Below are positions 34,032 to 46,325 of a stretch of 64,000 nucleotides of DNA, in pieces. The stretch covers positions 434,001 to 498,000 of IMG/VR virus record IMGVR_UViG_3300028654_000001; one strand, 5' to 3'. A model generated the notes under the pieces. The model did not search any database, was not told where the DNA came from, and saw nothing but the letters and a program-made list of their open reading frames with translations. Position 1 is the stretch's first letter. Each line of letters opens with the position of its first letter. The position numbers and the translations under genes were made by a program.

Positions 34032-34041
34032 AGGACATTAG

Positions 34042-34114: not shown

Positions 34115-34150
34115 AGAGTTACACCAAGTAATTGAAACAAGTAAAAAGGT

Positions 34151-34229
34151 TGGCGGAGCTGATGGGATTCGAACCCACGATCTATACCTTGACAGGGTAC
34201 TGGGGACGGCCGGACTCCCCTACAGCTCC
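34151..34229 (-). tRNA. tRNA-Asp(GTC)
   Basis: CT GTC AA, G73, CCA. Confidence 0.9.
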
Positions 34230-34264
34230 GTAGTATCACCACAATCGCCAGAATCGCTATCCAT
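34220..34264 (-). CDS. Asp-rich mini-ORF MDSDSGDCGDTTEL* ending inside tRNA-Asp
   Basis: Strong SD AAAGGAG; four GAT codons. Confidence 0.5.
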   Translation of the reverse strand: MDSDSGDCGDTTEL

Positions 34265-34283
34265 AAAGCATCTCCTTTCGTTT

Positions 34284-34820: not shown

Positions 34821-35008
34821 TTGCAGATTGGAGCAACCAAGCCCCTCATTGTACCCTGTACGAAAGGGATCGTAGTCTCAGTCATCTTTCCACATTTGTA
34901 ACAGGGGTAGCTAAATGGTTCTAGGTCATAACGCTTTGCCCAGAGCTTAGGGTCTACCCCGTAGCAGATCAACCGATGAGGTATTGGAGGGTAGCGTCTA
35001 CGTGCCAT
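34739..35008 (-). CDS. Small Zn-ribbon protein
   Basis: CYKCG...CNCGH from ATG 35008. Confidence 0.55.
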   Translation of the reverse strand: MARRRYPPIPHRLICYGVDPKLWAKRYDLEPFSYPCYKCGKMTETTIPFVQGTMRGLVAPICNCGHPTPPYCMVRDSKYGDLFSMDTLY

Positions 35009-35017
35009 AAGAGTTAC

Positions 35018-35148
35018 GCGGAGACAAGAAGTGCAGGGACTGTTTTGGGACCATTGCTCTGCCAGTTGAGCTACGCCTGCCAAAGCTGACGACGGGAATC
35101 GAACCCGCAACCCACGGTTTAGATTGTAGTCTCTACGATATTCTCCGC
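35018..35148 (-). ncRNA. Y RNA-like gene with permuted tRNA domain
   Basis: GCGGAGAAUAUC...GACUACAAUC...CUUGUCUCCGC; T arm then D arm. Confidence 0.78.
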
Positions 35149-35152
35149 ATAG

Positions 35153-35224
35153 TACCCCCGACAGGAGTCGAACCTGTGACCTTGAACTTAGGAAGTTCCT
35201 GCTCTTCCTCTGAGCTACGAGGGC
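35153..35224 (-). tRNA. tRNA-Arg(CCT)
   Basis: TT CCT AA. Confidence 0.88.
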
Positions 35225-35347
35225 GTTATTTAAGTGAGTAGAAAGAATTAAGCCACCTCGAAGATGGTGGTTCTTGAACTTTACCAAAAGGTTTGGCGGT
35301 CACCCAGATAGAGGCTGACTTTTTACCATCAACCTCAGAATAAGGTA

Positions 35348-35686
35348 CTACATATACACCGTCGTTTCGAGGCAAGGGTTTTTGTAAAGAACCGCAGGGA
35401 TAGCCTCTAACCACCCGTGCATGATAGCAGGCCTCAATCTCTTTAGGTCTAATCGACGGGCAAAGTGCTTTTCATCAACGTAGATAAACTCATCATCACC
35501 ACCCGTTCTATAAAGGATGGCTCCCTGCTCCAAGGTTGTGTCCTCATGCCCAACATGGAAGGTTTTCGTAACACGAAAGGCTGCAGTCTTGGACAACCTA
35601 ATGCCCCATGTTGGGTCGAGTCCTGGGACTCGATTCACATCAGGTGGGATGAAACTAGGCATCGTAGGCAGTTTGAATCTTATCAA
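35348..35686 (-). CDS. Hypothetical protein
   Basis: Co-oriented ORF. Confidence 0.5.
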   Translation of the reverse strand: MIRFKLPTMPSFIPPDVNRVPGLDPTWGIRLSKTAAFRVTKTFHVGHEDTTLEQGAILYRTGGDDEFIYVDEKHFARRLDLKRLRPAIMHGWLEAIPAVLYKNPCLETTVYM

Positions 35687-36008
35687 ACCGATCCCAATCA
35701 GTCCAGGGGAGATACCCTTTTGCGAGAGCCCAGCCTATTTTGGCTCGGCCTAAGACCTCCCTCGTCACGAGGGATAGTCGATCAAGGTCTTCCTTCGGAA
35801 GGGTTCCCTTGGAGATTGACTCCCTGAGATCTTTGAGCTTGATCACCCACCACGGGTACGGGTCCTCCTCGTTGTCAGTGACGTACCCAATCTCTAGGAG
35901 CTTGGGGTCATCATTGAGGAGGATGTTACCACCGTGCTGCTTGACATACTCCAAGATGGAGTTGCACATCTCGAAGAAGTCAGTGCATCTAGTCTGAGTC
36001 ATTGGCAT
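35655..36008 (-). CDS. Hypothetical protein
   Basis: ATG 36008 after GGTGTA. Confidence 0.6.
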   Translation of the reverse strand: MPMTQTRCTDFFEMCNSILEYVKQHGGNILLNDDPKLLEIGYVTDNEEDPYPWWVIKLKDLRESISKGTLPKEDLDRLSLVTREVLGRAKIGWALAKGYLPWTDWDRFDKIQTAYDA

Positions 36009-36129
36009 ACCTAGAACCAGTACACCAAAAGAAGTATGTGGATTGAACCCCACGACGCATCTCAAGCCACCCCTCACCACTCTTCACCCAGACCCTGATG
36101 ATGTCTCCTTTGGCTAGAGGACTTTTAGG

Positions 36130-36420
36130 TTACCTATTAGGCTTACTCTTGAACTTTGCAGCAAGTCTTCGAGCTGCATCCAAGAAAGAATTATCGTTAT
36201 TGTCTGAAGTCTCTGTTTTACCTTTACACTCTAATAGATAACCATCAGTAACTGAGGTGACTTTGGTTGGTCCAATAACGATTTGAAGTGCTTGCTTGGC
36301 CGCCTCCCGGATCCCCTTGCTCCGTCGAATAACCTCATACTCCTGATCGAACGTTGTCTCTAGGTTATGCTTAGCTGCAAACCTAGAGACAACGTTGGAG
36401 ATACTAACCACGTCTTCCAT
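36130..36420 (-). CDS. Hypothetical protein with NVVSRFAA motif
   Basis: CTTATAGG motif upstream. Confidence 0.6.
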   Translation of the reverse strand: MEDVVSISNVVSRFAAKHNLETTFDQEYEVIRRSKGIREAAKQALQIVIGPTKVTSVTDGYLLECKGKTETSDNNDNSFLDAARRLAAKFKSKPNR

Positions 36421-36463
36421 AACAAGGAAATCCTATAAGTGAGAAATTGACTGAACCATAAGT

Positions 36464-36541
36464 TGGGGTGATGTACGGGTATCGAACCCGCCAATATAAG
36501 GGCCACGACCTTACCCCGTCACCATGCTGGGTCACACCACC
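36464..36541 (-). tRNA. tRNA-His(GTG)
   Basis: G-1:C73, CCA. Confidence 0.88.
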
Positions 36542-36563
36542 ATAAAGTTGTTAGGGATTAATC

Positions 36564-37433
36564 TCAGGGGTTGAGCCCAAGACGTTCTGGATGAGGTTCC
36601 CAAGAAGTTAGTTTACTGCTAACCAAAGCACGGACACTGGATACCTCTCGAATCTGAGCTTTTTCATGGCTTATAACCATCTCCCGGTAGCGTTCCCAAT
36701 CTACAGGAGAGGTATCTTTTCTAGTGTAGGCCTTCAGGAATCCGATGACTAAAGTGTCTTCCTCATCTCGTTCAAGTCTGCCGAGTCGAACATTGAGATC
36801 CTTCAGAAAAGAGTCCAATTGGATGAGGTACTCTTTGGTTCCTTCAGCACTAAGCTCGAAAGGTGGCCACCCGTTACCGAAACACTCCCCTTGAAGGTAC
36901 CCTGTCCCAGGACGTTTGTATCCGTGAAGAACGACCCCGGGCATTGACCGATCACCCTTCTTGGCTCTTGGAAGCAGCATGAAGGGTCTGAAACAACACG
37001 GACAGGTTGCCCTGCCAACTCGAGCCCTCTCCTCACGCTCTTGCTTCTTCCTCTCGGTCTCAGCTTCGTAGGACTCCATCTGCAGAGCTTCGAGTACTTG
37101 ATCCTGGAAGTGATTCTTCGTCAACCACTTCTCTAGGGTCTCACCCTCAGCGTTTCGAATGATGAATAGGTACTCCCTCCCGATGTAATCGAAGAAGACT
37201 CCAGTCTCGAATACAGCTCCGTTTGGGGCAGTGAACTTGGTTCCTCCCCTGAGGGGCTCGATTGTCCAACCAAGATAGTCGAAGACTGGCCATAGCTCCT
37301 TGAGTGTTTTCCCTAGCTTTGGATTCTTTCGAACCCAGAGTAAGAGCTTTGTCATCTTCTCTGGATCCAGAGGTCTCTTACGAGCAGCCGCTTGAAAACG
37401 ACGGGCCACTCTCTGGACAATAGGATCTTCCAC
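36564..37433 (-). CDS. Hypothetical protein (CPCC...HGY...C) with RVARRF motif
   Basis: 289 aa, CTTATAGG upstream. Confidence 0.7.
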   Translation of the reverse strand: MEDPIVQRVARRFQAAARKRPLDPEKMTKLLLWVRKNPKLGKTLKELWPVFDYLGWTIEPLRGGTKFTAPNGAVFETGVFFDYIGREYLFIIRNAEGETLEKWLTKNHFQDQVLEALQMESYEAETERKKQEREERARVGRATCPCCFRPFMLLPRAKKGDRSMPGVVLHGYKRPGTGYLQGECFGNGWPPFELSAEGTKEYLIQLDSFLKDLNVRLGRLERDEEDTLVIGFLKAYTRKDTSPVDWERYREMVISHEKAQIREVSSVRALVSSKLTSWEPHPERLGLNP

Positions 37434-37471
37434 ACCAAGAAGTACCCTATAAGTGAAACTTGATCAAGTAG

Positions 37472-37554
37472 CGGAAGAGAGCAGAGTCGAACTGCGGTCC
37501 TTACGGGCATCCAGGTTTCCAAGCTGGCGGGCGACCACTCACCCCATCCCTTCC
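37472..37554 (-). tRNA. tRNA-Ser(GGA)
   Basis: Class II, TT GGA AA. Confidence 0.8.
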
Positions 37555-38061
37555 ATTTGTCCGATTACCCACACCACAAGTCCAAGAACCAAATAAACCA
37601 GACTCTCGAACTAATCGAAGAAATGGACTCAATAGAATCCAAGCCTCATAAGGCATATCTCTTCTTATGTAGTTACATCGTATACAACACGGTATTACAT
37701 TGGACTCAAGATGCCCAAGTGAGTTACCTCTACGATCCAAAGTCATTTTAAGTGAGGTCTCACCACAATACTGACACTCTTGTGAGATTAACTTCTCGAT
37801 AATCTCTTTGGTCAAGTCATTTGACCGCCCTGCCCTCCTATCTGACTGTTTAGAGTCCTTGAGTATGAACCCGGATCTGAATCTAGGATTAGCTCTTCGA
37901 TCCCGATCAAGTCTATTATACATATCCCTAATTCGTTGGTTATCTCGATAGATCTTAGCAGTACCCTCCTTCTTCAAGTAGTAGCACTTCCTACAGACAG
38001 CACTCTTATCGTAAAAAGGCTCATCTGGGGTTTCTTCTTTACCACAAGAGCAGACTCGCAT
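37501..38061 (-). CDS. HNH-like endonuclease ending inside tRNA-Ser(GGA)
   Basis: CQYCG, LDR...GH...NVIPCCIRCN; ATG 38061 after GGTGTA. Confidence 0.8.
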   Translation of the reverse strand: MRVCSCGKEETPDEPFYDKSAVCRKCYYLKKEGTAKIYRDNQRIRDMYNRLDRDRRANPRFRSGFILKDSKQSDRRAGRSNDLTKEIIEKLISQECQYCGETSLKMTLDRRGNSLGHLESNVIPCCIRCNYIRRDMPYEAWILLSPFLRLVRESGLFGSWTCGVGNRTNGRDGVSGRPPAWKPGCP

Positions 38062-38077
38062 ACTAAAGTTACACCAG

Positions 38078-38162
38078 CGGAAGGCAGACGATTCGAACGC
38101 CATAGTGTTACCTACGCACCGCTCAGCAGGCGGGCTCCAGACCAGATCCAGATTTACCTTCC
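38078..38162 (-). tRNA. tRNA-Ser(GCT)
   Basis: Class II, CT GCT GA. Confidence 0.82.
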
Positions 38163-38335
38163 ATAAAGTTTGGCAGGATCTCATTATTGGGTGCGCACCC
38201 TCAGAAATCTTGCTGGATCGGACCCTCAAGACCGACTGCCATTCAGCTTCCGCTTCCCTCATCTTACAAGAGTTCAGCAGCTTCAGCCCAAGTCAGGTAA
38301 CAGAGGTAAGATGATCCCTGATGATTCGGGCTTAG

Positions 38336-38423
38336 CGGAAAGTGTAGGAATCGAACCCTTACCCCTTACGAGGTACCCACCAGTTTTCGAAGCTGGTTGC
38401 CATCCGGTTAGCTGGCACCTTCC
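38336..38423 (-). tRNA. tRNA-Ser(CGA)
   Basis: Class II, TT CGA AA. Confidence 0.85.
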
Positions 38424-38436
38424 GTAAAATTGTGAT

Positions 38437-39207
38437 CTAAATCTCGAGATCATCTAAAAGAGACTCTAGGTCACCTTGGATGTACTCGAAGATCGACTGG
38501 TTGCCATCAAAGTACTTAGTCACACCCTGACCAACCTTGGTCTCTACTACATCAGTGCTAATCTCTTCAAAGTTAGATGGAAGTGCATCCTCCCACTCAT
38601 CATAGTTAGTAGGAAGGTTGTGTATCCACTCCTTGAAGAAAGCGAAACTACCGTAATCATGGTCAGAAGGTGAGAAGTCTGGGATGTAGCTATGAACCTG
38701 ATCCAGAGCCCTCTGTTGTTTAGAGAAGTCTAATGACTTCAACCAACTTAGATCCTCCTCTGTAGGAGCATCCTCAGGGAATGACCCAATACGATCTATC
38801 AGATCGTTCCGATCAAAATCAACAAGTACTTTGGCTATAGGAGAATCATCAATATCACTGTAGATATCGTCAGCATTGAAGTCATATCGTTGAAGAAGAA
38901 GCCCGATTAGCTTAAGTTCTCGCTTGAGTTCTTTTTGTAGGTTGGGTAAGTCAGAGGGATCATCTATTAAAGACTTGAATCGATGAGTGTATTCCTTGTC
39001 TAACTTCTTCAACCTAGAATCAATGTCCAGGAGTTTTCTGGTCTTATCACTCAAGGGTTTCGAGTCGAACGCTTTACTCATGGTATCTAATAAAGAGAGA
39101 GGCCCCGATAGATTCCACTCCTTGAATGTATACCAAGCTAGATTGAGTCTTCGGACATCAACCGCAGCTTTATACCTAGCAACCACCCGAGAAACTAGAG
39201 AACTCAT
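38437..39207 (-). CDS. Acidic hypothetical protein with RVVARYKAA motif
   Basis: 256-aa ORF. Confidence 0.7.
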   Translation of the reverse strand: MSSLVSRVVARYKAAVDVRRLNLAWYTFKEWNLSGPLSLLDTMSKAFDSKPLSDKTRKLLDIDSRLKKLDKEYTHRFKSLIDDPSDLPNLQKELKRELKLIGLLLQRYDFNADDIYSDIDDSPIAKVLVDFDRNDLIDRIGSFPEDAPTEEDLSWLKSLDFSKQQRALDQVHSYIPDFSPSDHDYGSFAFFKEWIHNLPTNYDEWEDALPSNFEEISTDVVETKVGQGVTKYFDGNQSIFEYIQGDLESLLDDLEI

Positions 39208-39235
39208 ATTGTAGATCTGAATACGAAAAGAATAG

Positions 39236-39307
39236 TCGGGGTGGTCAGACTTGAACTGACGGCCTCATGCTCCCAAAGCACGCGATCTACCACTGATCTA
39301 CACCCCG
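39236..39307 (-). tRNA. tRNA-Pro(TGG)
   Basis: Cloverleaf. Confidence 0.9.
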
Positions 39308-39370
39308 GTAACGATTACTCTTCTAGCACTTGGAGGGCAGGGTACCACATTACCCATCAAGTGGTATTAG

Positions 39371-39454
39371 TGCATCAGAGAGGACTTGAACCTCCACGGG
39401 TATTACCCCACTTGCACCTCAAGCAAGCGTGTTTGCCAGTTACACCACTGATGC
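39371..39454 (-). tRNA. tRNA-Leu(GAG)
   Basis: Class II. Confidence 0.9.
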
Positions 39455-39511
39455 ATATGTTAGTAAGATATGTCTAGGAAACCAAAGGTTTAACCCAAAC
39501 AAAAAAAATTC

Positions 39512-39620
39512 AAGGAAAAAGCCGCTAAGTCACCCCTGACAAGGGGTGCATAAGACTCGTTTTCAACCATAGAATGTAGTCCCACACAGTATTCAGGGGC
39601 TACTTAGCGGCTATTTCCTT
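39512..39620 (-). ncRNA. Minimal Y RNA-like gene with extended stem followed by a U tract
   Basis: CCCCUGAAUAC...GGACUACAUUC...CUUGUCAGGGG inside a ~19-bp outer stem. Confidence 0.68.
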
Positions 39621-39624
39621 AAAA

Positions 39625-39860
39625 GTTTGACCTCGACAAGTGGTGACAGAGAGGGTTTTTGTGGCCTACACATTGATGGCCCATCTTTCGATGGGTGACA
39701 TCCGTTCGTCCCGAGCCTTCGGCTCCCGACTAGTCTAAGTAGACGAGAGTCTCTGAGCCCTTGTTAAAGGGGCTACTGGCTCCATCGCTAGTCCCTCACG
39801 GGGCATCGCTACCTTAGGACCGTTATCGATTGTACTCCTTGTCGGTATTCGAGGTCGAAC
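39625..39860 (-). ncRNA. Large (236 nt) Y RNA-like gene with multi-hairpin domain
   Basis: GACCUCGAAUAC...GGAGUACAAUC...CUUGUCGAGGUC; own GGTGTATA promoter. Confidence 0.72.
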
Positions 39861-39940
39861 GAGATATACACCGATCTGATACCCAAGTGCAATAGGGAAA
39901 GTTGTCGGGGTGAAAGGATCTTCAACCTAGGTCAGCTAAT

Positions 39941-40017
39941 TGGTCAGGGCAGCCAGAGTTGAACTGGCGATCTTGTGTTCCCGAAACACACGCTTTACCA
40001 GGCTAAGCTATACCCTG
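39941..40017 (-). tRNA. tRNA-Pro(CGG)
   Basis: TT CGG GA, CCA. Confidence 0.88.
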
Positions 40018-40527
40018 AAGAGATAATTTCCCCTCGTGCACCCCAGCGTGACAGTTTCTACATAAGAGCACACAATTTTGAAGTTCTTGCTCTATCCGTT
40101 GCCAAGACCAACCCCTCCAACCTGAAAAGTTTGGGTCTTTCTTGCTAGGATCAAGGTGGTGCATATCTAGAGCTGACTTAAAAACATCAAACCCACAAAT
40201 ACGACAGTTACCACCGAGGTAAGCTATAACCTTACCCTTCTTTTCTTGACCCTTAGTTATGCAGTAATTATTGTGACACCTACCGCACACTTTTAGCTTA
40301 TGCCCATAAAACTTGGTGAGGTCGTCTTCACCACAGTATATACACTTGCGGGGTTTCCCATTAGGGTTTGGATCATTCGGAAGTTTTCCATATGGGCCTC
40401 GTTTGGTATGAAGCTCATACTTATTAAGCCAATATCTAACATTTGTGAAAGAGGTGTTTAGATCTATGGCAATCTGCCTTACACTCTTCCATTGCTGAAG
40501 ATGTAGGATAAGAACTTCTTTTTCCAT
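40003..40527 (-). CDS. HNH endonuclease ending inside tRNA-Pro(CGG)
   Basis: N-terminal HTH, GGNCRICG, ALDMHHLDP, CVLLCRNCH. Confidence 0.85.
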   Translation of the reverse strand: MEKEVLILHLQQWKSVRQIAIDLNTSFTNVRYWLNKYELHTKRGPYGKLPNDPNPNGKPRKCIYCGEDDLTKFYGHKLKVCGRCHNNYCITKGQEKKGKVIAYLGGNCRICGFDVFKSALDMHHLDPSKKDPNFSGWRGWSWQRIEQELQNCVLLCRNCHAGVHEGKLSLQGIA

Positions 40528-40588
40528 TATTCAGAGTGTAGCTCAGATTAGTAAAGGTACCAGATTGAGCTATACCCTGATGAAAGTT

Positions 40589-40748
40589 GGCCGCTACTGG
40601 CGGGTTTCCCCGGCCAGTTACCAGAGCTTGCCTCTATCCGCTGCTTGCAACGGGGTCTACGGCAAGATGCCCAAGCCCGCGGTCTTTGCCAGGCTTGGAG
40701 ATTCAGCTAGCCCGGTCCTTGTAGAGGCCCGGATGATCATTGCTAGCC
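40589..40748 (-). ncRNA. Unclassified GC-rich multi-hairpin RNA
   Basis: Intergenic, GGCTAGC/GCGGCC ends, several stems including CGGG-GAAA-CCCG. Confidence 0.4.
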
Positions 40749-41111
40749 TTATGAAAGTTCTTTGGAATCGTGTAGTCGACGCATCTGAATCTCGGCAGTA
40801 TTCAGGGCGGCTTGGTAAACTGTGGATTCCCAGGGACTCAAGGACGCTTTATTTGGCTTGAACAAAGCCTTCTTCAAGAAGATCCCATCCATGCGGCCAC
40901 ATCTCTTGAGCTCGATTGGATTATCGATGATGAGGCCCAGAATGCCCATCGAGGCGTCCGAGGCCCCGCACCAAGAGTCATCCCCACTGTTATTGAAGAT
41001 GGCCCCAGAGAGGGCTATCTTACCGCACTGGAGGATGGTCAGGTGCCTCACCACAGGGGCGGGCATCCTAGCCAGGGTATCACCGATGAGGGTTCCTCGT
41101 TTGAGTGACAT
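40749..41111 (-). CDS. Hypothetical protein
   Basis: ATG 41111 after GGTGTATTAT. Confidence 0.6.
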   Translation of the reverse strand: MSLKRGTLIGDTLARMPAPVVRHLTILQCGKIALSGAIFNNSGDDSWCGASDASMGILGLIIDNPIELKRCGRMDGIFLKKALFKPNKASLSPWESTVYQAALNTAEIQMRRLHDSKELS

Positions 41112-41128
41112 GCTGAATAATACACCAG

Positions 41129-41202
41129 TCAGGGTAAATGGACTCGAACCATCGACCTCTTGCTCCCCGAGCAAGCGCTCTACCAAACTGAGCTACACCC
41201 TG
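41129..41202 (-). tRNA. tRNA-Pro(GGG)
   Basis: TC GGG GA. Confidence 0.88.
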
Positions 41203-41205
41203 ATA

Positions 41206-41349
41206 GTCACGAAGACAAGAATTCGAAAGAGAAACGTACGGCGTCTTGACCGCTAGACGACCCCCGCATAGGCTTGAGCGGAGGGAGGGATTCGAACCCC
41301 CGATATCCGGCTTGGATGGCAATGTACTCCTTCAGGCATTCTTCGTGGT
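41206..41349 (-). ncRNA. Y RNA-like gene with permuted tRNA domain
   Basis: CACGAAGAAUGC...GGAGUACAUU...CUUGUCUUCGUG; T arm, closed acceptor, D arm. Confidence 0.78.
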
Positions 41350-41955
41350 GGTTGGAGGCGGAGTTGAACCGCCGACACCTTGATTTTCAGTCAAGTGCTC
41401 TACCGACTGAGCTATCCAACCGTTAGGCAAATCAAAGTCAAGAAGATCTCCTTCATACCTCTCTGCCTCAGCAATAAGCAATGAGTCCTCTCTGGTTGAA
41501 TGCTCTATTCTGTGGCAACAAGAGCAGAGCAACTCACACTTCTCAAGTTCTTTCTTCAGTACACTCCAACTCTTGTTAGCTAAACCACCAAAGTTGAAGT
41601 CCTTATCACGTAGGTGGTGGAACTCAAAGGCTGACTGATGCCCAGACCACCCACACCTAATACATTTCCCACCCAGCATCTTGATCCCAGTAGCTTTAGC
41701 TCGATATCTACGGATCTTGGTGTTGCAAGAGTTGCATCTACGTCTACGACTACTCCCATTAAGTCTACCGCAAATCACACATGAGTCATACGTTGGTGAT
41801 TGAATCAACTCGACCCTAAGACCTGACTTGAATGGGACACAAGTAAGGCAAGCTCTTCTCCTGTTGAGAACCCTAATGGTACCATCAACAATGACCCGAT
41901 TAGGGAAGTTTACCTTGCATACTCGACAGGTAGGCATACCAAAAATATAGCACAA
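41332..41955 (-). CDS. HNH endonuclease reading through tRNA-Phe
   Basis: GGKCIRCG, FEFHH, KCELLCSCCH. Confidence 0.85.
   Translation of the reverse strand: MCYIFGMPTCRVCKVNFPNRVIVDGTIRVLNRRRACLTCVPFKSGLRVELIQSPTYDSCVICGRLNGSSRRRRCNSCNTKIRRYRAKATGIKMLGGKCIRCGWSGHQSAFEFHHLRDKDFNFGGLANKSWSVLKKELEKCELLCSCCHRIEHSTREDSLLIAEAERYEGDLLDFDLPNGWIAQSVEHLTENQGVGGSTPPPTTTKNA
41346..41421 (-). tRNA. tRNA-Phe(GAA)
   Basis: Cloverleaf, CCA. Confidence 0.92.
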
Positions 41956-41956
41956 T

Positions 41957-42042
41957 TGGTATCGGAGGAGGGACTCGAACCCTCAAGGGATTTCTCCCAG
42001 CAGTATTTGAAGCTGCCGCGTTTGCCTTTTCGCCACTCCGGC
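41957..42042 (-). tRNA. tRNA-Leu(CAA)
   Basis: Class II, CCA. Confidence 0.88.
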
Positions 42043-42048
42043 ATGTAG

Positions 42049-42130
42049 TACCCAAGGAGAGACTTGAACTCTCACGTCACAAGGACCACCGGTTCTGAGC
42101 CGGCGCTGTACGCCATTCCAGCACTTGGGC
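42049..42130 (-). tRNA. tRNA-Leu(CAG)
   Basis: Class II. Confidence 0.88.
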
Positions 42131-42132
42131 AT

Positions 42133-42205
42133 GGACCAGAGACAAGAAGTGCAGAGAGGGTGTTTTCTCCAATTGAATTGTACTCCCCACGAGCATTCTC
42201 TGGTT
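42133..42205 (-). ncRNA. Minimal Y RNA-like gene
   Basis: ACCAGAGAAUGC...GGAGUACAAU...CUUGUCUCUGGU. Confidence 0.72.
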
Positions 42206-42280
42206 TGGTCGGCCGAGGTGGACTTGAACCACCGTTACACGCGTATCAGGCGTAGATCCTAACCATTAGAAGACCGGCCG
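42206..42280 (-). tRNA. tRNA-Ile(GAT)
   Basis: tacgc-CT GAT AC-gcgtg, CCA; Gln/Glu-like D arm. Confidence 0.8.
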
Positions 42281-42664
42281 TCGTCGCATCCCATTGGTTC
42301 GATACCTGTGACAGAGAGCGCAAACAAGCTCACACTTGGCGATCTCCTCAAGTAATCTTTCAACGGAGGTGCATTTTGAATTTGCACGAGCTATCTCAAA
42401 AGACTTTGTTGTTGGGTCAAGATGATCAAAGTCCATAGCCCAGTAAGGGTGTGGCTCTCCACAATCTGTACAAGGCTTGCCACTCTTGGCCTCCTGGATG
42501 ACCCTCTTGATTTCAGCTCTGATCTTTACCTTATCCTTTCTAACTCTGGCACATTGACACAACTTGCAGTACCCCATGAGGTACTTACCCCTCCCGTGAA
42601 ACTCACGTTCGGACTTAGTTTGAGTGCAAGCCGGGCAATACTTGGTGCGCTTAGCTTTCGGTAT
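42266..42664 (-). CDS. HNH endonuclease ending inside tRNA-Ile; frame extends upstream to an ATA
   Basis: KYCPAC...YCKLC, PCTDCG, MDFDHLDP, KCELVCALCH. Confidence 0.75.
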   Translation of the reverse strand: MPKAKRTKYCPACTQTKSEREFHGRGKYLMGYCKLCQCARVRKDKVKIRAEIKRVIQEAKSGKPCTDCGEPHPYWAMDFDHLDPTTKSFEIARANSKCTSVERLLEEIAKCELVCALCHRYRTNGMRRRPVF

Positions 42665-42702
42665 ACTGGTGATAACTACACCAATGAGTTATCACCGAAA
42701 GT

Positions 42703-42842
42703 GAGCGAAGACAAGAGAGTGAAAGACAAGGGAACCCTTCTAAATACCACTCGTGAAGCTTTCACTTCACGGCAGGATCTGCCCCTGCAAAGCTCCCGGG
42801 CGTAAGCCCCCGGATAATGAAGTCCTTCTTGCATTCTTCGCT
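42703..42842 (-). ncRNA. Y RNA-like gene with three-hairpin domain
   Basis: GCGAAGAAUGC...GGACUUCAUU...CUUGUCUUCGC. Confidence 0.72.
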
Positions 42843-42929
42843 TGGTAGCCCCTCCCGGACTCGAACCGGGACGTCACGAAGGACAGGAGGGTTTAAGCCT
42901 CCCCCGTCTGCCAGTTCCAGCAAGGAGCC
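42843..42929 (-). tRNA. tRNA-Leu(TAA)
   Basis: Class II, CCA. Confidence 0.88.
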
Positions 42930-42932
42930 ATG

Positions 42933-43121
42933 TTAGTCTTTGGTCTTCCAGATCTCGTCTGTAATTGGAGGGAGCAGCTCGCCAGCCTCAAGGGCTCTTC
43001 GACGGTCTTCCTCCATACGAATCTTCATCTCTTCATAACGGAGGCGATCCTCCTCCGTCTCCTCGGGCTCTGGGATGATCCCACCCTCTTCAGCTATCAC
43101 CCTAGTCTGAACTATAACCAT
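42933..43121 (-). CDS. Small acidic hypothetical protein
   Basis: Co-oriented ORF. Confidence 0.45.
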   Translation of the reverse strand: MVIVQTRVIAEEGGIIPEPEETEEDRLRYEEMKIRMEEDRRRALEAGELLPPITDEIWKTKD

Positions 43122-43290
43122 CGGAGGCCCAACCCTTCCCTTGAAGTTGAAAACCTGTGCCGCCGCTTATGAGCCTCTTGGCTTCTGGCTTGTCGCACTT
43201 GGGGCAATCCGTCAACGGAGGCTCCGTAATCTTCTGGTCAGCCTCCCAGGTGTGTTGGCAGGCCTTGCATTGGTACTCGTAAGTCGGCAC
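43102..43290 (-). CDS. FmdB-family zinc-ribbon protein
   Basis: PTYEYQCKAC...CPKC...RLIS...FQLQGKGW...Y from GTG 43290. Confidence 0.85.
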   Translation of the reverse strand: MPTYEYQCKACQHTWEADQKITEPPLTDCPKCDKPEAKRLISGGTGFQLQGKGWASDGYSSD

Positions 43291-43300
43291 TTGATTACCC

Positions 43301-43762
43301 TTAGGATGGCATTGGGCCTGGGCCAATGTTGACTTCGTGTTTGACCCGGGTGAACCTATCGAACAGCGGCTTACCACCAAGGAGTTTGATGAGTCGGCAC
43401 CGGGTCTTGAAGATGATCCTATGAAGACGGTTTGGATCTGGAGGTGGTGGTGGCTCATACTTGTGCCAATGATTTCTTGCAGAACTCAAAGATGCTATTA
43501 GACATTGAACACCACCAGGGTCAGGTATCGCATCCGGGTACCCAGCTTCGACCTTGGTAGTACTAATCACCGAGGTTCCCCAAAGGTGCCCTACTAAATT
43601 ACCACCCCACTCTGGTCTGGGTTCTGACTTACCAAGTAACTCATAGTCACCATGAGCAGCAAGAACTGGTACATCTTCTGGGTGAACAAGAAGTACTGCT
43701 ACTCGCAGATCTTCACATTCAACCCTAGACAAGGTATCAGAAACATCATGAAGCGTGATCAT
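43301..43762 (-). CDS. Hypothetical protein
   Basis: ATG 43762 after GGTGTA; GHLWGT segment similar to GLLWST in 28580-29089. Confidence 0.6.
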   Translation of the reverse strand: MITLHDVSDTLSRVECEDLRVAVLLVHPEDVPVLAAHGDYELLGKSEPRPEWGGNLVGHLWGTSVISTTKVEAGYPDAIPDPGGVQCLIASLSSARNHWHKYEPPPPPDPNRLHRIIFKTRCRLIKLLGGKPLFDRFTRVKHEVNIGPGPMPS

Positions 43763-43781
43763 AAAGATCACTACACCGAAG

Positions 43782-44291
43782 CTATCGAATACTAGAACCA
43801 AGGAACCTGAACGCCACCCGTGTTTCAACAGAAGCCTCTTTGGCCTTCTGCACGAATTGACGCATCTTTCCCTTGAGGATATCTATGTCGTCTTGAGTAG
43901 CTGGACGTCCAAGTTGAGTACTCAGAGCCTTACTCCACTGTTGAACGAATGGATCCTTGGGGTCAGGCTTCGGAGCATCCTTGGGCTTCTTATCGAAGAC
44001 TGGGGCATCTTTGGCCTTCTCCTTTTGGACAAACTGCTTCATCTGTCCTTTGAGAATGTCGATATCGGCCTCCGTTGCAGGCCTACCAAGATTATCACTA
44101 AGCGCCTTCTGCCACTGATTCTTAAAGTGGTCATCCTTGCCACCTTCAGACTTAGGAGCTGGAGGCTTACCCTTGTTCTCAACCACCCGGTGCTTGTGCT
44201 TGTCAGCTTTCGGGTGAGCTTTCAGATAGGTATCCAAAGCCTCTTGAGTTGGGAACTCCTTAGCAAGTTTGGTATCTTCCATAATGACCAC
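43782..44291 (-). CDS. Hypothetical protein with internal ~35-aa duplication
   Basis: QW.KALS..LGRPAT..DIDILKG.M.QFVQK occurs twice. Confidence 0.7.
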   Translation of the reverse strand: MVIMEDTKLAKEFPTQEALDTYLKAHPKADKHKHRVVENKGKPPAPKSEGGKDDHFKNQWQKALSDNLGRPATEADIDILKGQMKQFVQKEKAKDAPVFDKKPKDAPKPDPKDPFVQQWSKALSTQLGRPATQDDIDILKGKMRQFVQKAKEASVETRVAFRFLGSSIR

Positions 44292-44338
44292 ACTCAGGAC
44301 AAGAATAAGAACTATACCGTGATCTCAAAGAAGAGTTT

Positions 44339-44412
44339 TGGTGACCCCACCGGAATTTGAATCCGGACCACGGCCTTGAAAGGGCCGTCACCTACCGTTA
44401 GTGTATGGGGCC
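44339..44412 (-). tRNA. tRNA-Glu(TTC)
   Basis: CT TTC AA, CCA. Confidence 0.85.
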
Positions 44413-44417
44413 GTTAG

Positions 44418-44492
44418 CGTCCCTGAGGGGCGATGATCCCCTTTCAGCAGCTTGAGAGGCTACTATCCTAACCAAACGTAGACGACAGGGAC
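44418..44492 (-). tRNA. tRNA-Glu(CTC)
   Basis: CT CTC AA; atypical T loop. Confidence 0.8.
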
Positions 44493-44498
44493 ATGATA

Positions 44499-44565
44499 GG
44501 TGAGACAAGGGACAAACTAGAGAGGTTCAATTATCGAGATTGTACTCCAGTTCAGCATTCTCACC
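44499..44565 (-). ncRNA. Minimal Y RNA-like gene
   Basis: GGUGAGAAUGC...GGAGUACAAUC...CUUGUCUCACC. Confidence 0.72.
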
Positions 44566-44567
44566 GG

Positions 44568-44651
44568 CGGAAGGAGCGGGATTCGAACTCGCAGAGCTGT
44601 TACGCTCGATTGTTTTCAGGACAATTCCCCTCACCAATAGGGAGCCCTTCC
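44568..44651 (-). tRNA. tRNA-Ser(TGA)
   Basis: Class II, CC TGA AA. Confidence 0.82.
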
Positions 44652-44662
44652 GTAAAGTAGAG

Positions 44663-44739
44663 TGGATGCAGGAATTGGATTTGAACCAATGACCTCCAGC
44701 TTATGAGGCTGGCAAGCTACCGGGCTGCTCTATCCTGCG
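44663..44739 (-). tRNA. tRNA-Met(CAT), initiator-like acceptor (C1:A72)
   Basis: fMet-like D arm; lacks the 3 G-C anticodon-stem pairs. Confidence 0.85.
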
Positions 44740-44740
44740 G

Positions 44741-44812
44741 AGCTGATGAGGGGACTTGAACCCGCAACCGCTGGTTTACGAAACCAGTGCTCTACCATTG
44801 AGCTACATCAGC
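44741..44812 (-). tRNA. tRNA-Thr(CGT)
   Basis: Cloverleaf. Confidence 0.9.
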
Positions 44813-44894
44813 ATGGGGCACTCCCGGCTGTGCCAGGCGCCCAGGGGATCTCTACTTCCCCCACTCGTCTCCCGTAGAGATGAGGAAAACGAGT

Positions 44895-44972
44895 TGGTTG
44901 CGGAGCCTTGGATTTGAACCAAGAACCTTCGGGTTATGAGCCCGACGCGCTACCGGGTTGCGCCAGCCCGCA
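44895..44972 (-). tRNA. tRNA-fMet(CAT)
   Basis: tcGGG-CT CAT AA-CCCga, CCA. Confidence 0.85.
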
Positions 44973-45016
44973 ATGCTGACCCTACCAGAGTGACTTGGAA
45001 GGGTCAAGAGACTTTG

Positions 45017-45089
45017 CTCCAGAGAAGGGACTCGAACCCCTAACACCGCGGTTAACAGCCGCGTGCTCTACCAATTGAGCTACACTGGA
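45017..45089 (-). tRNA. tRNA-Asn(GTT)
   Basis: Cloverleaf, G73. Confidence 0.9.
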
Positions 45090-45355
45090 ATATGGAGGCT
45101 GTTTCAAGCCTCCCCCGACACGAGTTGGTGCTCGCGCCGTCGGCACTGTGCTTGCCCCTACGGGGCTTGCCAATGCCTTACTTCATTACGGTCAGGAATG
45201 AACAACTACCCCACAGGCACGGTCGCTGCAGCCCTCGGTTTACTTGAGGTCGATCACGGCACGTCTGCTACCCTGGCCCACAACAGACCAGTAGAATCAG
45301 AATTCATTCACTGTTTAGATTGTCAAGGATCTAGAAAGCAAGGTGCCTTCTTGAT

Positions 45356-45430
45356 TGGTTCCGACACCTGGACTCGAACCAGGATAACGGGATTCAAAGT
45401 CCCGTGCCCTAACCATTGGACGATATCGGA
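45356..45430 (-). tRNA. tRNA-Gln(TTG)
   Basis: Cloverleaf, CCA. Confidence 0.9.
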
Positions 45431-45442
45431 TCAATTACTTAG

Positions 45443-45513
45443 TGGGACATCACAGATTCGAACTGAAATCTACGGTTTAAGAGACCGCTGCTCTACCATT
45501 GAGCTAATATCCC
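45443..45513 (-). tRNA. tRNA-Lys(CTT)
   Basis: CT CTT AA. Confidence 0.9.
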
Positions 45514-45519
45514 ATTGAG

Positions 45520-45593
45520 TGGTAGAGGCAGAGAGATTCGAACTCACATTAACGGGTTAAAAGCCCGCTGGTCTACCGTTGACCTATACCTCC
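45520..45593 (-). tRNA. tRNA-Lys(TTT)
   Basis: CT TTT AA, CCA. Confidence 0.88.
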
Positions 45594-45676: not shown

Positions 45677-45759
45677 TGGGGCATGGTGGAGTTGAACCAC
45701 TTAACCTGAGGCGACAGTTTTACAGACTGCTACTACTTCCGCGTAGTTAATCACACCCC
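45677..45759 (-). tRNA. tRNA-Tyr(GTA)
   Basis: CT GTA AA, long variable arm. Confidence 0.8.
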
Positions 45760-45813
45760 ATAGAGATTGGGTCTAGCTGCGGTTACGAGTCGATAGCGAT
45801 CTGTGATTCCCAT
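45751..45813 (-). CDS. Mini-ORF MGITDRYRLVTAARPNLYGV* ending inside tRNA-Tyr
   Basis: AAAGGA close upstream; two TAT codons. Confidence 0.35.
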   Translation of the reverse strand: MGITDRYRLVTAARPNLYGV

Positions 45814-45930
45814 TGTCCTTTGCTTTCCTAACGAACTGACAAACCTATCCTGATGCCACTGTGTGTGGCAGACGAAACTCTAGTTTGCACACAGTCTCTG
45901 TGTGGTGTGTTTTATTGGAAAAAGAGCCCT

Positions 45931-46009
45931 AAAACGACTGAAGCCACCGTGGGTTCTCCCAGGGCGGCTTCTGTTTACGGACATTCCGTATGTTCAGTCT
46001 AGCCGCCCT
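45931..46009 (-). terminator. Attenuator: mutually exclusive antiterminator and terminator
   Basis: AGGGCGGCU (46009-46001) pairs with AGCCGCCCU, which is also the 5' arm of hairpin 45971-45940 followed by AGUCGUUUU. Confidence 0.7.
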
Positions 46010-46160
46010 ATTTTCCCACCTCTTCTGGACGCATTGTATGATAAGAGGTGGGTGCCCAAGGCTTTGCAATAAAAAGTCCACTATTACCCTGGGCGCACGT
46101 ATCCAATAGCGATAATCTCGCTGATTTGGATTGTGATATGAGCCTGGATAGAGAGGACAC
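46008..46160 (-). CDS. 50-aa leader peptide using all 20 amino acids and 41 distinct codons
   Basis: GTG start after AGGTAGGT; stop overlaps the antiterminator arm. Confidence 0.65.
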   Translation of the reverse strand: MSSLSRLISQSKSARLSLLDTCAQGNSGLFIAKPWAPTSYHTMRPEEVGK

Positions 46161-46206
46161 GTTTACCTACCTGTGGGGCACACCTAAACGATGCGCCAAC
46201 TCAAGA

Positions 46207-46235
46207 ACCATACACCGAAGGAACAAGGGGGTCAA
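46207..46235 (-). promoter_or_regulatory. Sigma70-like promoter at the head of the RNA array
   Basis: TTGACC-17bp-TATGGT. Confidence 0.7.
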
Positions 46236-46325
46236 GGGGGTCAAGCACTTTTTTGAAAATTCTTTTTTTTGACCACATGCCCGCCCCTCGGGGACAGAAA
46301 GTTCTTATCCAACTTCCTAGAAAGG

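What the first reader, a model, noticed from the sequence alone, without database searches (positions are those of the whole stretch)
45931..46235. Pan-codon leader-peptide attenuator gating the whole tRNA/tmRNA/Y-RNA array
Seen: promoter TTGACC-17-TATGGT, then a 50-codon ORF missing from the ORF track (46160-46008, VSSLSRLISQSKSARLSLLDTCAQGNSGLFIAKPWAPTSYHTMRPEEVGK*). It contains all 20 amino acids and 41 distinct codons; its last 37 codons include 35 different ones (uniform random expectation about 28). Its TAG overlaps AGGGCGGCU, which can pair with the 5' arm of the downstream terminator hairpin. Known: in trp/his attenuation, ribosome position chooses between terminator and antiterminator, but those leaders sense one amino acid. 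Inference: a ribosome reaching the stop blocks the antiterminator so transcription ends, while a stall at any codon (loss of any tRNA, e.g. through a host anticodon nuclease) allows read-through. That would be a general translation-damage sensor switching on a replacement tRNA set. Caveat: the terminator U tract is weak and the array has internal promoters.
Basis: partly seen in the sequence, partly recalled or inferred. Interest (0 to 1): 0.93.

Follow-up and report, generated by a model that had tools for sequence, protein, structure and literature searches.

The report
Twenty-amino-acid leader before phage tRNAs
At the head of the tRNA gene array of a family of uncultivated huge phages sits a short translated leader that always contains all 20 amino acids, followed by a two-state RNA switch, which probably lets the phage make more of its own tRNAs when translation of any codon falters.

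Summary
It becomes significant only when relatives are compared. The window comes from a 512-kb huge phage. Its 50-codon ORF (46160-46008, minus strand) has syntenic counterparts in 28 distinct DNA loci, plus 12 further database proteins. All are uncultivated phage or metagenome sequences. None was found in 185,579 bacterial genomes or 50,697 GenBank phage records.

In every member the frame is open and ends at a stop codon embedded in, or abutting, a G+C-rich segment 'a'. A Shine-Dalgarno-like motif precedes the start in most members. All 40 full-length peptides contain all 20 amino acids (background 2-4%). The rare residues are usually single and sit at different positions in different members. 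The peptide sequence itself is barely constrained.

Segment a' can pair with 'a' (antiterminator) or with a'' (hairpin). Both helices show compensatory changes and are nearly equal in energy. Downstream, on the same strand, come tRNA-Tyr (called in most loci), Lys, Lys, Gln and Asn.

My best reading is a trp-like, ribosome-mediated attenuator that samples every aminoacyl-tRNA. The weak points are a poor U tract, the lack of experiments, synonymous-codon diversity that is less consistent than amino-acid completeness, and untested control of the whole 22-kb array.

The parts
46207..46270 (-). Promoter region: A-rich tract (46270-46249), two overlapping TTGACC boxes (46244-46239 and 46235-30) and a -10-like TATGGT (46212-46207).
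   Evidence: Promoter scan. TTGAC preceded by an A- or T-rich tract, with TAnnnT 17 nt downstream, recurs 43-90 nt upstream of the start codon in 15 of 22 relatives. The motif AAAAARNNCTTGAC occurs once in the window.
46161..46200 (-). 5' untranslated leader with a small hairpin (46197-46177) and a Shine-Dalgarno-like AGGUAGGU (46172-46165).
   Evidence: Sequence and fold. Relatives carry GGAG, AGGA, AGGAG or AAGGUG 2-7 nt before their start codon.
46008..46160 (-). Leader ORF: GTG start, 50 codons, UAG stop, all 20 amino acids.
   Evidence: The frame is open in all members, with 0 stops in frame against 39 and 22 in the other two frames. All 40 full-length homologues have all 20 amino acids.
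46101..46131 (-). Hairpin inside the ORF (AUCCAA/UUGGAU enclosing AGCGA/UCGCU).
   Evidence: Fold of the leader, z = -4.86. Read by eye, L003 and L008 show hairpins of different sequence at the equivalent place; I did not test this formally.
46015..46052 (-). Hairpin P1 at the 3' end of the ORF. The 5' arm is CCCACCUCUU (46052-46043, resembling an anti-Shine-Dalgarno sequence). The 3' arm is AAGAGGUGGG (46024-46015, Shine-Dalgarno-like). The arms encode P-T-S and E-V-G.
   Evidence: RNAalifold consensus pairs 13-20:49-56. The invariance is partly forced by my search patterns, so it carries no covariation evidence.
46001..46010 (-). Segment a, UAGGGCGGCU. It includes the stop codon and is the 5' strand of the antiterminator.
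   Evidence: 10 positions form canonical pairs in at least 21 of 27 sequences. Compensatory changes occur in L225/L228 (G-C to A-U), and at the helix end (U-A, U-G, C-G). L200 and L276 have a UAA stop followed by GGGG; in L200 this pairs with CCCC in a'.
45977..45989 (-). Spacer hairpin h (ACGGA-AUG-UCCGU) between a and a'.
   Evidence: It keeps a' 27-41 nt from the stop codon in all members, outside a terminating ribosome's footprint.
45960..45971 (-). Segment a', GAAGCCGCCCUG. This shared strand pairs either with a or with a''.
   Evidence: The base just 5' of GCCGCC changes A to G together with U to C in both a and a''.
45940..45961 (-). Mini-hairpin UGGG-AGAA-CCCA and segment a'' (GGUGGCUUC, 45948-45940). 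Together they form the loop and 3' strand of the terminator-like hairpin.
   Evidence: The hairpin is -18 to -31 kcal/mol across the family. The a':a'' pairs are canonical in at least 23 of 27 sequences at 9 positions, with A-U/G-C covariation at 3 of them.
45926..45939 (-). Conserved tail AGUCGUUUUAGGGC: a short U run 5 nt after the stem, followed by GGG.
   Evidence: Alignment A1. The tail has 3-5 U. It can pair with segment a through G-U pairs to close a three-way junction in the minimum-energy fold. Its role is unexplained.
45677..45760 (-). tRNA-Tyr-like gene (anticodon GUA), the first gene after the leader. ARAGORN missed it.
   Evidence: Rfam tRNA-Sec model, 32.7 bits, below the gathering score. 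ARAGORN calls tRNA-Tyr(GUA) at the same place in most relatives.
23935..45593 (-). Downstream array: 41 ARAGORN tRNA genes and a tmRNA, all on the minus strand, interspersed with ORFs. It begins Lys(UUU), Lys(CUU), Gln, Asn.
   Evidence: The order Tyr-Lys-Lys-Gln-Asn is conserved in relatives.

Best explanation
This is a ribosome-mediated transcription attenuator at the head of a huge-phage tRNA array. Its leader peptide acts as a sampler of all 20 aminoacyl-tRNAs.

Proposed mechanism:
1. A sigma-70-type promoter starts a transcript, and a ribosome translates its first roughly 50-codon ORF.
2. If the ribosome runs unhindered to the stop codon, it covers segment a, which contains or directly follows that stop codon.
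3. The shared strand a' then pairs with a'', forming a G+C-rich hairpin followed by a short U run. Much of the transcription ends before the tRNA genes.
4. If the ribosome is absent, or is held up at any earlier codon because some charged tRNA is scarce, a pairs with a' as soon as a' is made. The hairpin cannot form, and RNA polymerase reads on into tRNA-Tyr, Lys, Lys, Gln, Asn and beyond.
5. Because every amino acid is present, usually once for the rare ones, shortage of any one can trigger read-through. The phage's own tRNAs can then restore leader translation and close the loop.

Shown here: the ORF is conserved and open, has ribosome-binding motifs, and contains all 20 amino acids. The two mutually exclusive helices exist and covary. 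The stop codon lies in or next to a. The element always precedes the array.

Inferred: translation itself, termination at the hairpin, the direction of the switch, and its biological use (tRNA homeostasis and/or a response to tRNA-cleaving host defences).
For: Family and place:
- The window is from the 512,571-bp contig IMGVR_UViG_3300028654_000001.
- Four independent DNA patterns and a protein profile recovered 28 distinct loci and 12 further proteins.
- Every locus with enough downstream sequence continues on the same strand into the array: tRNA-Tyr(GUA) where ARAGORN calls it (most loci), then Lys, Lys, Gln, Asn.

Translated, but with a free sequence:
- There are 0 in-frame stops, against 39 and 22 in the other two frames over 23 members.
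- Shine-Dalgarno motifs lie 2-7 nt upstream of the start in most members.
- Substitutions are spread 133/127/159 over the three codon positions. 184 codon changes are nonsynonymous and 59 synonymous.
- AlphaFold2 gives mean pLDDT 59.9, pTM 0.12 and no secondary structure.

All 20 amino acids:
- 40 of 40 full-length peptides of 45-82 residues as called (most 48-61) have all 20, whichever start codon is chosen.
- The background is 1.8-3.8% for windows of phage proteins and 1-3% for random draws from the family's own composition.
- A tree simulation started from a real member keeps all 20 in a mean of 0.5-1 of 21 tips. It never exceeded 12 of 21 in 56,000 runs.
- Shuffling residues within alignment columns among 16 divergent members gives a mean of 1.3 and a maximum of 6 of 16 complete peptides. 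The observed value is 16.
- Tyr occurs exactly once in 22 of 22 peptides, spread over 7 alignment columns. Trp occurs once in 21 of 22, over 5 columns. His occupies 15 columns.
- Codon diversity exceeds the genome-usage expectation in all 23 members.

Switch:
- Before a'' is made, a pairs with a' (5-12 bp) in 23 of 26 members.
- The antiterminator state averages -28.8 kcal/mol and the terminator state -30.0 kcal/mol.
- Masking 15 nt at the stop codon yields the a':a'' hairpin in all members.
- Compensatory changes occur in both helices.
- RNAalifold independently chooses P1 plus a:a'.
- The stop-codon position is conserved relative to a even where the sequence differs: UAA in L200 and L276, and a three-codon extension in L228/L232 that puts the stop at the 3' end of a.
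Against: - The hairpin is not followed by a canonical U tract. There are 3-5 U starting 3-5 nt after the stem, and the terminator scan does not list it. Intrinsic termination may therefore be weak, factor-dependent or absent.
- The minimum-energy fold of the full leader contains the a':a'' hairpin even without a ribosome, with a paired to the tail. Read-through in the unoccupied state would rest on folding kinetics.
- No transcript ends, ribosome occupancy or genetics exist for these uncultivated phages.
- Synonymous-codon diversity is heterogeneous against a uniform null.
- The strongly conserved C-terminal motif PTSxxxA(N/K)PEVG, its hairpin P1 and the tail CGUUUYRGGG are not explained by a simple sampler model.
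- The array spans 22 kb and includes ORFs, among them homing-endonuclease-like genes. One attenuator need not control all of it.
Confidence: 0.6

Rival explanations
1. The sensor is the same (a translated all-20 leader plus an a/a'/a'' switch), but the output is not transcription termination. The alternative folds would instead set processing, stability or folding of the leader-tRNA precursor, for example cleavage that releases tRNA-Tyr or formation of a stable three-way-junction leader RNA. They might also act through Rho or another factor.
For: The U tract is poor and is not called by the terminator scan. The tail GUCGUUUY-GGG is conserved beyond mere U-richness and can pair with a to close a three-way junction in 17 of 26 minimum-energy folds. 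The roughly 140 nt between the hairpin and tRNA-Tyr are more conserved between the window and L008 than the ORF is.
Against: The three-strand geometry matches classical attenuators: a stop codon in strand 2 and about 60-70 nt from the stop codon to the end of the hairpin. The a:tail pairing relies on G-U pairs, and its variable positions are not compensated.
Confidence: 0.15
2. The leader is a nascent-peptide or stop-codon arrest element. The conserved C-terminal PTSxxxA(N/K)PEVGx-stop would hold the ribosome at the stop codon, possibly helped by the Shine-Dalgarno-like GGAGGUG three nucleotides before the last sense codon. It would report release-factor activity or a small molecule rather than tRNA supply. 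The full amino-acid set would be secondary.
For: The C-terminal 15-17 residues are the only well-conserved part of the peptide, as in known arrest peptides. The stop is UAG in 25 of 28 DNA loci. An internal Shine-Dalgarno-like sequence lies next to the stop codon.
Against: The conserved codons coincide with the arms of hairpin P1, so RNA pairing can explain them. The last codon before the stop is free (K, S, P, T, N, A, Q, E, I, D). This model does not explain why all 20 amino acids are kept while their positions move.
Confidence: 0.1
3. The ORF encodes a small functional protein, and the downstream structure is an ordinary terminator or insulator between it and the tRNA genes.
For: The ORF is conserved and has ribosome-binding motifs. 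Gene callers annotate it as a hypothetical protein.
Against: Nonsynonymous changes outnumber synonymous ones 184 to 59, with almost no third-position excess. No fold is predicted. There are no Pfam or PHROGs matches. A simple terminator needs no covarying competitor strand that contains the stop codon.
Confidence: 0.05
4. The element is an untranslated structured RNA, and the open frame is incidental.
For: The leader folds far better than shuffled controls (z = -4.86) and has several conserved hairpins.
Against: The frame is open in all members despite 22-50% pairwise identity and indels that keep the frame. Stops are present in the other two frames. Shine-Dalgarno motifs are conserved and the amino-acid set is complete. 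No Rfam family matches.
Confidence: 0.03

Closest known systems
Leader-peptide attenuators of amino-acid biosynthetic operons (trp, his, leu, thr, ilv, pheA; also pheST) - from textbook knowledge; pheL in PMC3082878
   Same: A short translated leader precedes the regulated genes. Three RNA segments form mutually exclusive antiterminator (2:3) and terminator (3:4) helices. The stop codon is placed so that a terminating ribosome covers segment 2. The distance from the stop codon to the hairpin is similar.
   Different: Those leaders carry runs of one or two regulatory codons and control enzymes that make that amino acid. This leader has no runs, contains every amino acid (the rare ones once), and controls tRNA genes in a phage. 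I found no segment 1 able to pair with a, so the state without a ribosome should read through rather than terminate. The U tract is weak.
uORFs that sense general translation stress (toiL of E. coli topAI-yjhQ, PMC12121999; vmlR leader, PMC9226507; msrD leader, PMC10314930)
   Same: Ribosome slowing within a short uORF is converted, through alternative RNA structure, into expression of downstream genes that relieve a translation problem.
   Different: Those respond to ribosome-targeting antibiotics at particular stall sites and switch on resistance or toxin-antitoxin genes. None is reported to keep a complete amino-acid set or to control tRNA genes.
T-box riboswitches
   Same: They couple the charging state of tRNA to read-through of a terminator upstream of translation-related genes.
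   Different: T-boxes bind one uncharged tRNA directly, without translation. No T-box or other Rfam family matches here.
tnaC and other arrest peptides
   Same: The C-terminal part of the peptide is conserved, and the position of the stop codon matters for downstream read-through.
   Different: The last codon is free here, and no ligand or Rho site is evident. The composition signal has no counterpart in those systems.
Phage tRNA sets used against tRNA-cleaving defences (T5 tRNA-Lys against PARIS, PMC11464382; T5 tRNA-Tyr against retron-Eco7 and tRNA-Lys against PrrC, PMC11555353; hypothesis in PMC10264068)
   Same: Phage-encoded tRNAs replace host tRNAs. The first genes after this leader are Tyr and Lys, the species cleaved in those studies.
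   Different: Those papers describe the tRNAs and, for T5, a strong promoter. They do not describe a translation-sensing leader.

Membership tests
Ribosome-mediated (leader-peptide) transcription attenuators | A short ORF with translation signals in the 5' leader of the regulated transcript | tested here: met
   The frame is open in 28 of 28 loci, with 0 in-frame stops against 39 and 22 in the other frames. Shine-Dalgarno motifs lie 2-7 nt before the start in most members.
Ribosome-mediated (leader-peptide) transcription attenuators | Two mutually exclusive helices that share one strand (antiterminator and terminator) | tested here: met
   a:a' and a':a'' both form and both covary. Their mean energies are -28.8 and -30.0 kcal/mol.
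Ribosome-mediated (leader-peptide) transcription attenuators | The stop codon is placed so that a terminating ribosome blocks the antiterminator | tested here: met
   The stop codon lies inside or at the edge of a in all members, including those with UAA or an extended ORF. Masking 15 nt there gives the a':a'' hairpin.
Ribosome-mediated (leader-peptide) transcription attenuators | An intrinsic terminator: a G+C-rich hairpin directly followed by a U tract | tested here: inconclusive
   The hairpin is strong (-18 to -31 kcal/mol), but only 3-5 U follow, starting 3-5 nt after the stem. The scan does not call it.
Ribosome-mediated (leader-peptide) transcription attenuators | Clustered codons for the one amino acid that is sensed | tested here: not met
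   There are no runs. Instead all 20 amino acids are present, with the rare ones mostly as single copies.
Ribosome-mediated (leader-peptide) transcription attenuators | Read-through responds to ribosome stalling in vivo or in vitro | not testable with these tools
   The phages are uncultivated and no transcript or ribosome data are held.
T-box riboswitch | Specifier loop and T-box sequence recognised by the Rfam model | tested here: not met
   No match at the gathering score in the window, nor at E <= 10 in 45500-46500.
Y RNA (named in the finding's title) | Match to an Rfam Y RNA family | tested here: not met
   Only tRNA and tmRNA families reach their gathering scores in the 64-kb window.
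Arrest peptides (tnaC/secM type) | Critical residues conserved at the peptidyl-transferase centre, including the last codon | tested here: inconclusive
   PTSxxxA(N/K)PEVG is conserved, but it coincides with hairpin P1, and the final codon varies freely.

The most novel reading that the evidence does not exclude
This would be a general sensor of translation capacity: the first attenuator whose leader peptide is built to sample every one of the 20 aminoacyl-tRNAs. It would let huge phages switch on, and feed back on, their own near-complete tRNA set whenever any host tRNA or charging step fails. That includes failure caused by host shut-off or by tRNA-cleaving immune nucleases.
Probability: 0.55. 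Interest if true: 0.92.

Novelty: new variant of a known kind. Interest (0 to 1): 0.88.

Why it matters
Phage tRNA arrays have been discussed mainly in terms of codon compensation, and more recently as replacements for tRNAs destroyed by bacterial immunity. How a phage decides when to make them is largely unknown. If this reading is right, the element shows that attenuation logic, known for single amino acids, has been generalised into a test of the whole decoding apparatus. It would give a concrete, portable part (about 270 nt) for testing that idea in laboratory strains. It would also explain an unusual evolutionary signature: selection on the composition of a peptide rather than on its sequence. 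Finally, it offers a simple search rule for finding analogous sensors elsewhere: a small ORF with all 20 amino acids upstream of tRNA genes.

Tried and rejected
- Rfam at gathering thresholds on the whole window, and at E <= 10 on 45500-46500, gave only tRNA, tmRNA and chance-level matches.
- blastn and tblastn against 50,697 GenBank phage records with the leader, its neighbours and a relative's peptide gave no match.
- Pfam and PHROGs on the peptide and the three upstream ORFs gave no match.
- The pattern scan of 185,579 bacterial and archaeal genomes returned 71 hits. Only one of them (L174) also passed the anti-Shine-Dalgarno-arm filter, and it was a false positive, so I found no cellular copy.
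- I looked for a segment 1 able to pair with a, as in trp superattenuation. No conserved complement was seen upstream (by eye).
- I considered +1 frameshifting of the prfB type, because GGAGGUG sits 3 nt before the last sense codon. I rejected it because the last codons are varied and not slippery, and no conserved frame continues past the stop.
- I considered stop-codon read-through or recoding. A second in-frame UAG follows in some members, but nothing is conserved beyond it, and no CUA-anticodon tRNA was seen.
- I looked for a second copy of the element or of its promoter motif inside the array and found none.
- I did not use the count of structure pairs, to avoid typing long dot-bracket strings. 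Pair tables were computed in a script instead.
- Two tool calls failed on argument limits, one on term length and one on a file name.
Full report
**What is in the window**

On the minus strand, an A-rich tract and two overlapping TTGACC boxes are followed 17 nt later by TATGGT (46235-46207). About 40 nt downstream, a GTG at 46160 opens a 50-codon frame that ends at UAG 46010-46008.

The stop codon is the start of UAGGGCGGCU (segment a, 46010-46001). After a small hairpin comes GAAGCCGCCCUG (a', 45971-45960), then a mini-hairpin, then GGUGGCUUC (a'', 45948-45940), then AGUCGUUUUAGGGC. The 346-nt leader folds much better than shuffled controls (z = -4.86).

ARAGORN finds 41 tRNA genes and a tmRNA, all on the minus strand, between 23935 and 45593. 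A tRNA-Tyr-like gene with anticodon GUA at 45760-45677 was missed by ARAGORN but is seen with Rfam below its gathering score. No Y RNA or other Rfam family matches.

**The single sequence is not remarkable**

In this window, 13 of 296 mechanical ORFs of 40-70 codons also contain all 20 amino acids. The case therefore rests on relatives.

**Relatives**

The window is part of a 512,571-bp IMG/VR contig. I collected relatives in five ways:
- the neighbouring 220-residue protein;
- a motif spanning the end of the ORF and segment a;
- a motif confined to the ORF end, which says nothing about a, a' or a'';
- a motif confined to a', which says nothing about the ORF;
- a protein profile.

These gave 28 distinct DNA loci and 12 further full-length proteins. 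All come from viral or metagenomic contigs, several of 360-512 kb. Scans of 185,579 bacterial and archaeal genomes and of 50,697 GenBank phage records gave nothing real.

Wherever downstream sequence is available, the element is followed on the same strand by tRNA-Lys, Lys, Gln and Asn. In most loci a called tRNA-Tyr(GUA) comes first. In the window, the element and its promoter motif occur once.

**The ORF is real, but its sequence is free**

Every member has an open frame of at least 50 codons ending at the homologous stop. A GTG or ATG lies 49-60 codons upstream, and in most members GGAG, AGGA, AGGAG or AAGGUG lies 2-7 nt before it.

Over 23 members there are no stops in this frame, against 39 and 22 in the other two frames. 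Pairwise peptide identity falls to 20-30%. Differences are spread almost evenly over the three codon positions (133/127/159), and nonsynonymous codon changes outnumber synonymous ones 184 to 59.

AlphaFold2, given the family alignment, predicts no structure (pLDDT 59.9, pTM 0.12). The peptide has no Pfam or PHROGs match. This is what is expected if the act of translation matters and the product does not.

**The composition signal**

All 40 full-length peptides (45-82 residues as called by the source, most 48-61) contain all 20 amino acids, whichever plausible start codon is used. The only exceptions are three 34-40-residue database gene calls that begin at an internal ATG. They lack only His, which lies upstream in the complete ORF where that ORF is known (P0007, a truncated call of the L068 ORF).

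The background probability is 1.8-3.8% for windows cut from this phage's proteins, and 1-3% for random draws from the family's own composition.

I ran two controls for shared ancestry:
- **Tree simulation.** I simulated evolution along the family tree from a real member, using estimated site rates and an equal-input model. On average 0.5-1 of the 21 other tips kept all 20 amino acids. The count never exceeded 12 of 21 in 56,000 runs, even with branch lengths halved.
- **Column shuffle.** I permuted residues within alignment columns among 16 divergent members. This keeps each column's preferences. It gave a mean of 1.3 and a maximum of 6 complete peptides in 20,000 shuffles, against 16 of 16 observed.

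The reason is visible in the alignment. Rare residues are usually present once, but at different places:
- Tyr occurs exactly once in 22 of 22 peptides, over 7 columns.
- Trp occurs once in 21 of 22, over 5 columns.
- His occupies 15 columns, Phe 12 and Asp 11.

The column shuffle overstates independence, because clades share positions. The tree simulation does not have that weakness.

**Codons versus amino acids**

Given each peptide's amino acids, the number of distinct codons exceeds the expectation from the phage's own codon usage in all 23 members (P < 0.01 in about half). Against uniform synonymous usage the excess is only moderate and uneven: mean z is 0.9, the Stouffer Z is 3.7 for 16 representatives, and one member is at -2.2.

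The robustly conserved property is therefore completeness of the amino-acid set. "Pan-codon" overstates it. Window-encoded tRNAs can read 45 of the 50 leader codons. The uncovered ones are Ser UCA, UCG and AGU, and His CAU.

**The RNA switch**

RNAalifold on 22 members selects hairpin P1 and the a:a' helix. Most of those pairs are invariant, partly because my first patterns fixed them. The informative sequences are therefore those found with motifs that left the helices free:
- L225 and L228/L232 have GGCGAC paired with GUCGCC, a G-C to A-U change. a'' tolerates this as a G-U pair.
- L200 has a UAA stop followed by GGGG, paired with CCCC in a'. L276 also has UAA followed by GGGG.
- L246 has GG paired with CC.
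- In L228/L232 the ORF is three codons longer, so the stop lies at the 3' end of a.

In an anchor-based pair table of 27 sequences:
- a:a' is canonical in at least 21 of 27 sequences at ten consecutive positions, with more than one canonical pair type at six.
- a':a'' is canonical in at least 23 of 27 at nine positions, with A-U/G-C exchanges at three.
- The base 5' of GCCGCC in a' changes A to G together with U to C in both partners.

Folding supports the switch:
- When the transcript is cut just before a'', a pairs with a' (5-12 bp) in 23 of 26 members.
- The two states are nearly equal in energy, with means of -28.8 and -30.0 kcal/mol.
- When 15 nt at the stop codon are masked to mimic a terminating ribosome, the a':a'' hairpin forms in every member.
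- a' lies 27-41 nt beyond the stop codon, outside such a footprint.

**How it most likely works**

The geometry is that of the trp attenuator (textbook knowledge): strand 2 (a) carries the stop codon, strand 3 (a') is shared, and strand 4 (a'') completes a hairpin. A ribosome that reaches the stop covers a, the hairpin forms, and transcription is curtailed. A ribosome held anywhere upstream leaves a free, and the polymerase reads into the tRNA genes.

With every amino acid represented, lack of any charged tRNA would open the gate. The phage tRNAs made as a result would close it again. I found no strand 1, so an untranslated leader should also read through.

Two features are only conjecturally placed:
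- Hairpin P1 pairs an anti-Shine-Dalgarno-like CCCACCUCC with GGAGGUGGG just before the stop. It may pause the polymerase until the ribosome arrives, or hold the terminating ribosome in place.
- The tail CGUUUY-GGG is conserved and can pair with a through G-U pairs, closing a three-way junction in many minimum-energy folds.

**Weak points**

- The U run is short and offset from the stem, and the terminator scan does not call it.
- The full-length minimum-energy fold already contains the hairpin without a ribosome, so the outcome depends on kinetics.
- Nothing here shows translation, termination or a response to stalling directly.
- Whether one gate controls the whole 22 kb is unknown. The array includes ORFs, among them HNH-type endonuclease-like genes and a DRAT-like protein. 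Promoter-like matches inside the array are at the chance level.

**Comparison with what is known**

The element passes the structural tests for a leader-peptide attenuator. It fails the defining test of clustered regulatory codons, and the terminator test is inconclusive. It works like such an attenuator but is a distinct variant.

The nearest functional relatives are uORFs that sense general translation stress, such as toiL (PMC12121999) and the vmlR leader (PMC9226507). These respond to antibiotics and do not carry this composition signature.

Full-text searches found no description of a leader peptide or attenuator upstream of phage tRNA arrays. The main survey of huge phages mentions up to 67 tRNAs but no such element (PMC7162821).

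The first genes behind the gate, Tyr and Lys, are the tRNA species cleaved by retron-Eco7 PtuAB, PrrC and PARIS AriB and replaced by phage T5 tRNAs (PMC11555353, PMC11464382). This fits a counter-defence use but does not demonstrate one.

**Verdict**

The finding is a real, conserved and apparently undescribed element. The sampler-attenuator reading is the best supported (about 0.6). The main rival keeps the sensor but changes the output.

Noticed in passing
window 45677-45760 (-): A tRNA-Tyr-like gene (anticodon GUA, long variable arm) is missed by ARAGORN and scores only 32.7 bits on the Rfam tRNA-Sec model. ARAGORN calls tRNA-Tyr at the same place in most relatives. The window's tRNA list therefore undercounts.
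   Followed up: partly
window 45761-45900 (-); L008 12000-12140: The roughly 140 nt between the hairpin and tRNA-Tyr are nearly identical between the window and L008, although their leader peptides are only 38% identical. A motif CUAUCGACNCGUAACCGCAGC lies just upstream of tRNA-Tyr, and ACCGCAGC recurs in a distant clade (L068). This may be a second structured or processing element.
   Followed up: no
window 45926-45939 (-) and relatives (alignment A1 columns 140-152): The tail GUCGUUUY-(A/U/G)GGG is conserved in sequence, not just in U content. It can pair with segment a, and its GGG with the CCC of a'. L083 has CCCAG in a' and CUGGG in the tail, where most others have CCCUG and YAGGG. The role is unexplained.
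   Followed up: partly
window 23935-24281 (-): The phage tmRNA (Rfam 96 bits) has the predicted tag peptide VADLPRDSLGSG. It does not end in the usual hydrophobic Ala-Ala type of degradation signal.
   Followed up: no
L031 13208-13279; L003 1530-1603; L086 13089-13159: Related arrays hold odd tRNA-like genes: one with anticodon UCA (called SeC, possibly a UGA reader), one with a four-base anticodon call (CUGG), and one with a two-base call.
   Followed up: no
window 26734-27924 (-), 25611-26399 (-), 22659-23222 (-), 47673-48098 (+), 48028-49419 (-): ORFs within and beside the array match a DRAT-like ADP-ribosyltransferase (E 1e-10), HNH endonucleases (one weakly), a GIY-YIG nuclease and an N6/N4 DNA methylase.
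   Followed up: partly
L228 and L232 (leader ORF end): In this clade the leader is three codons longer (ending NKGD), so its UAG lies at the 3' end of segment a rather than the 5' end. The ribosome would melt a rather than merely cover it.
   Followed up: partly
window 46230-46244 (-): The -35 element is duplicated (CTTGACCCC twice, 9 nt apart), unlike the single copy in relatives.
   Followed up: no
window 46015-46052 (-): The 5' arm of hairpin P1 (CCCACCUCC in most members) resembles the anti-Shine-Dalgarno end of 16S rRNA, and the 3' arm is a perfect GGAGGUG. With the stop codon in the A site, this internal Shine-Dalgarno sequence ends 3 nt before the P-site codon. That spacing is known from prfB frameshifting, although the last codons here are not slippery.
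   Followed up: partly
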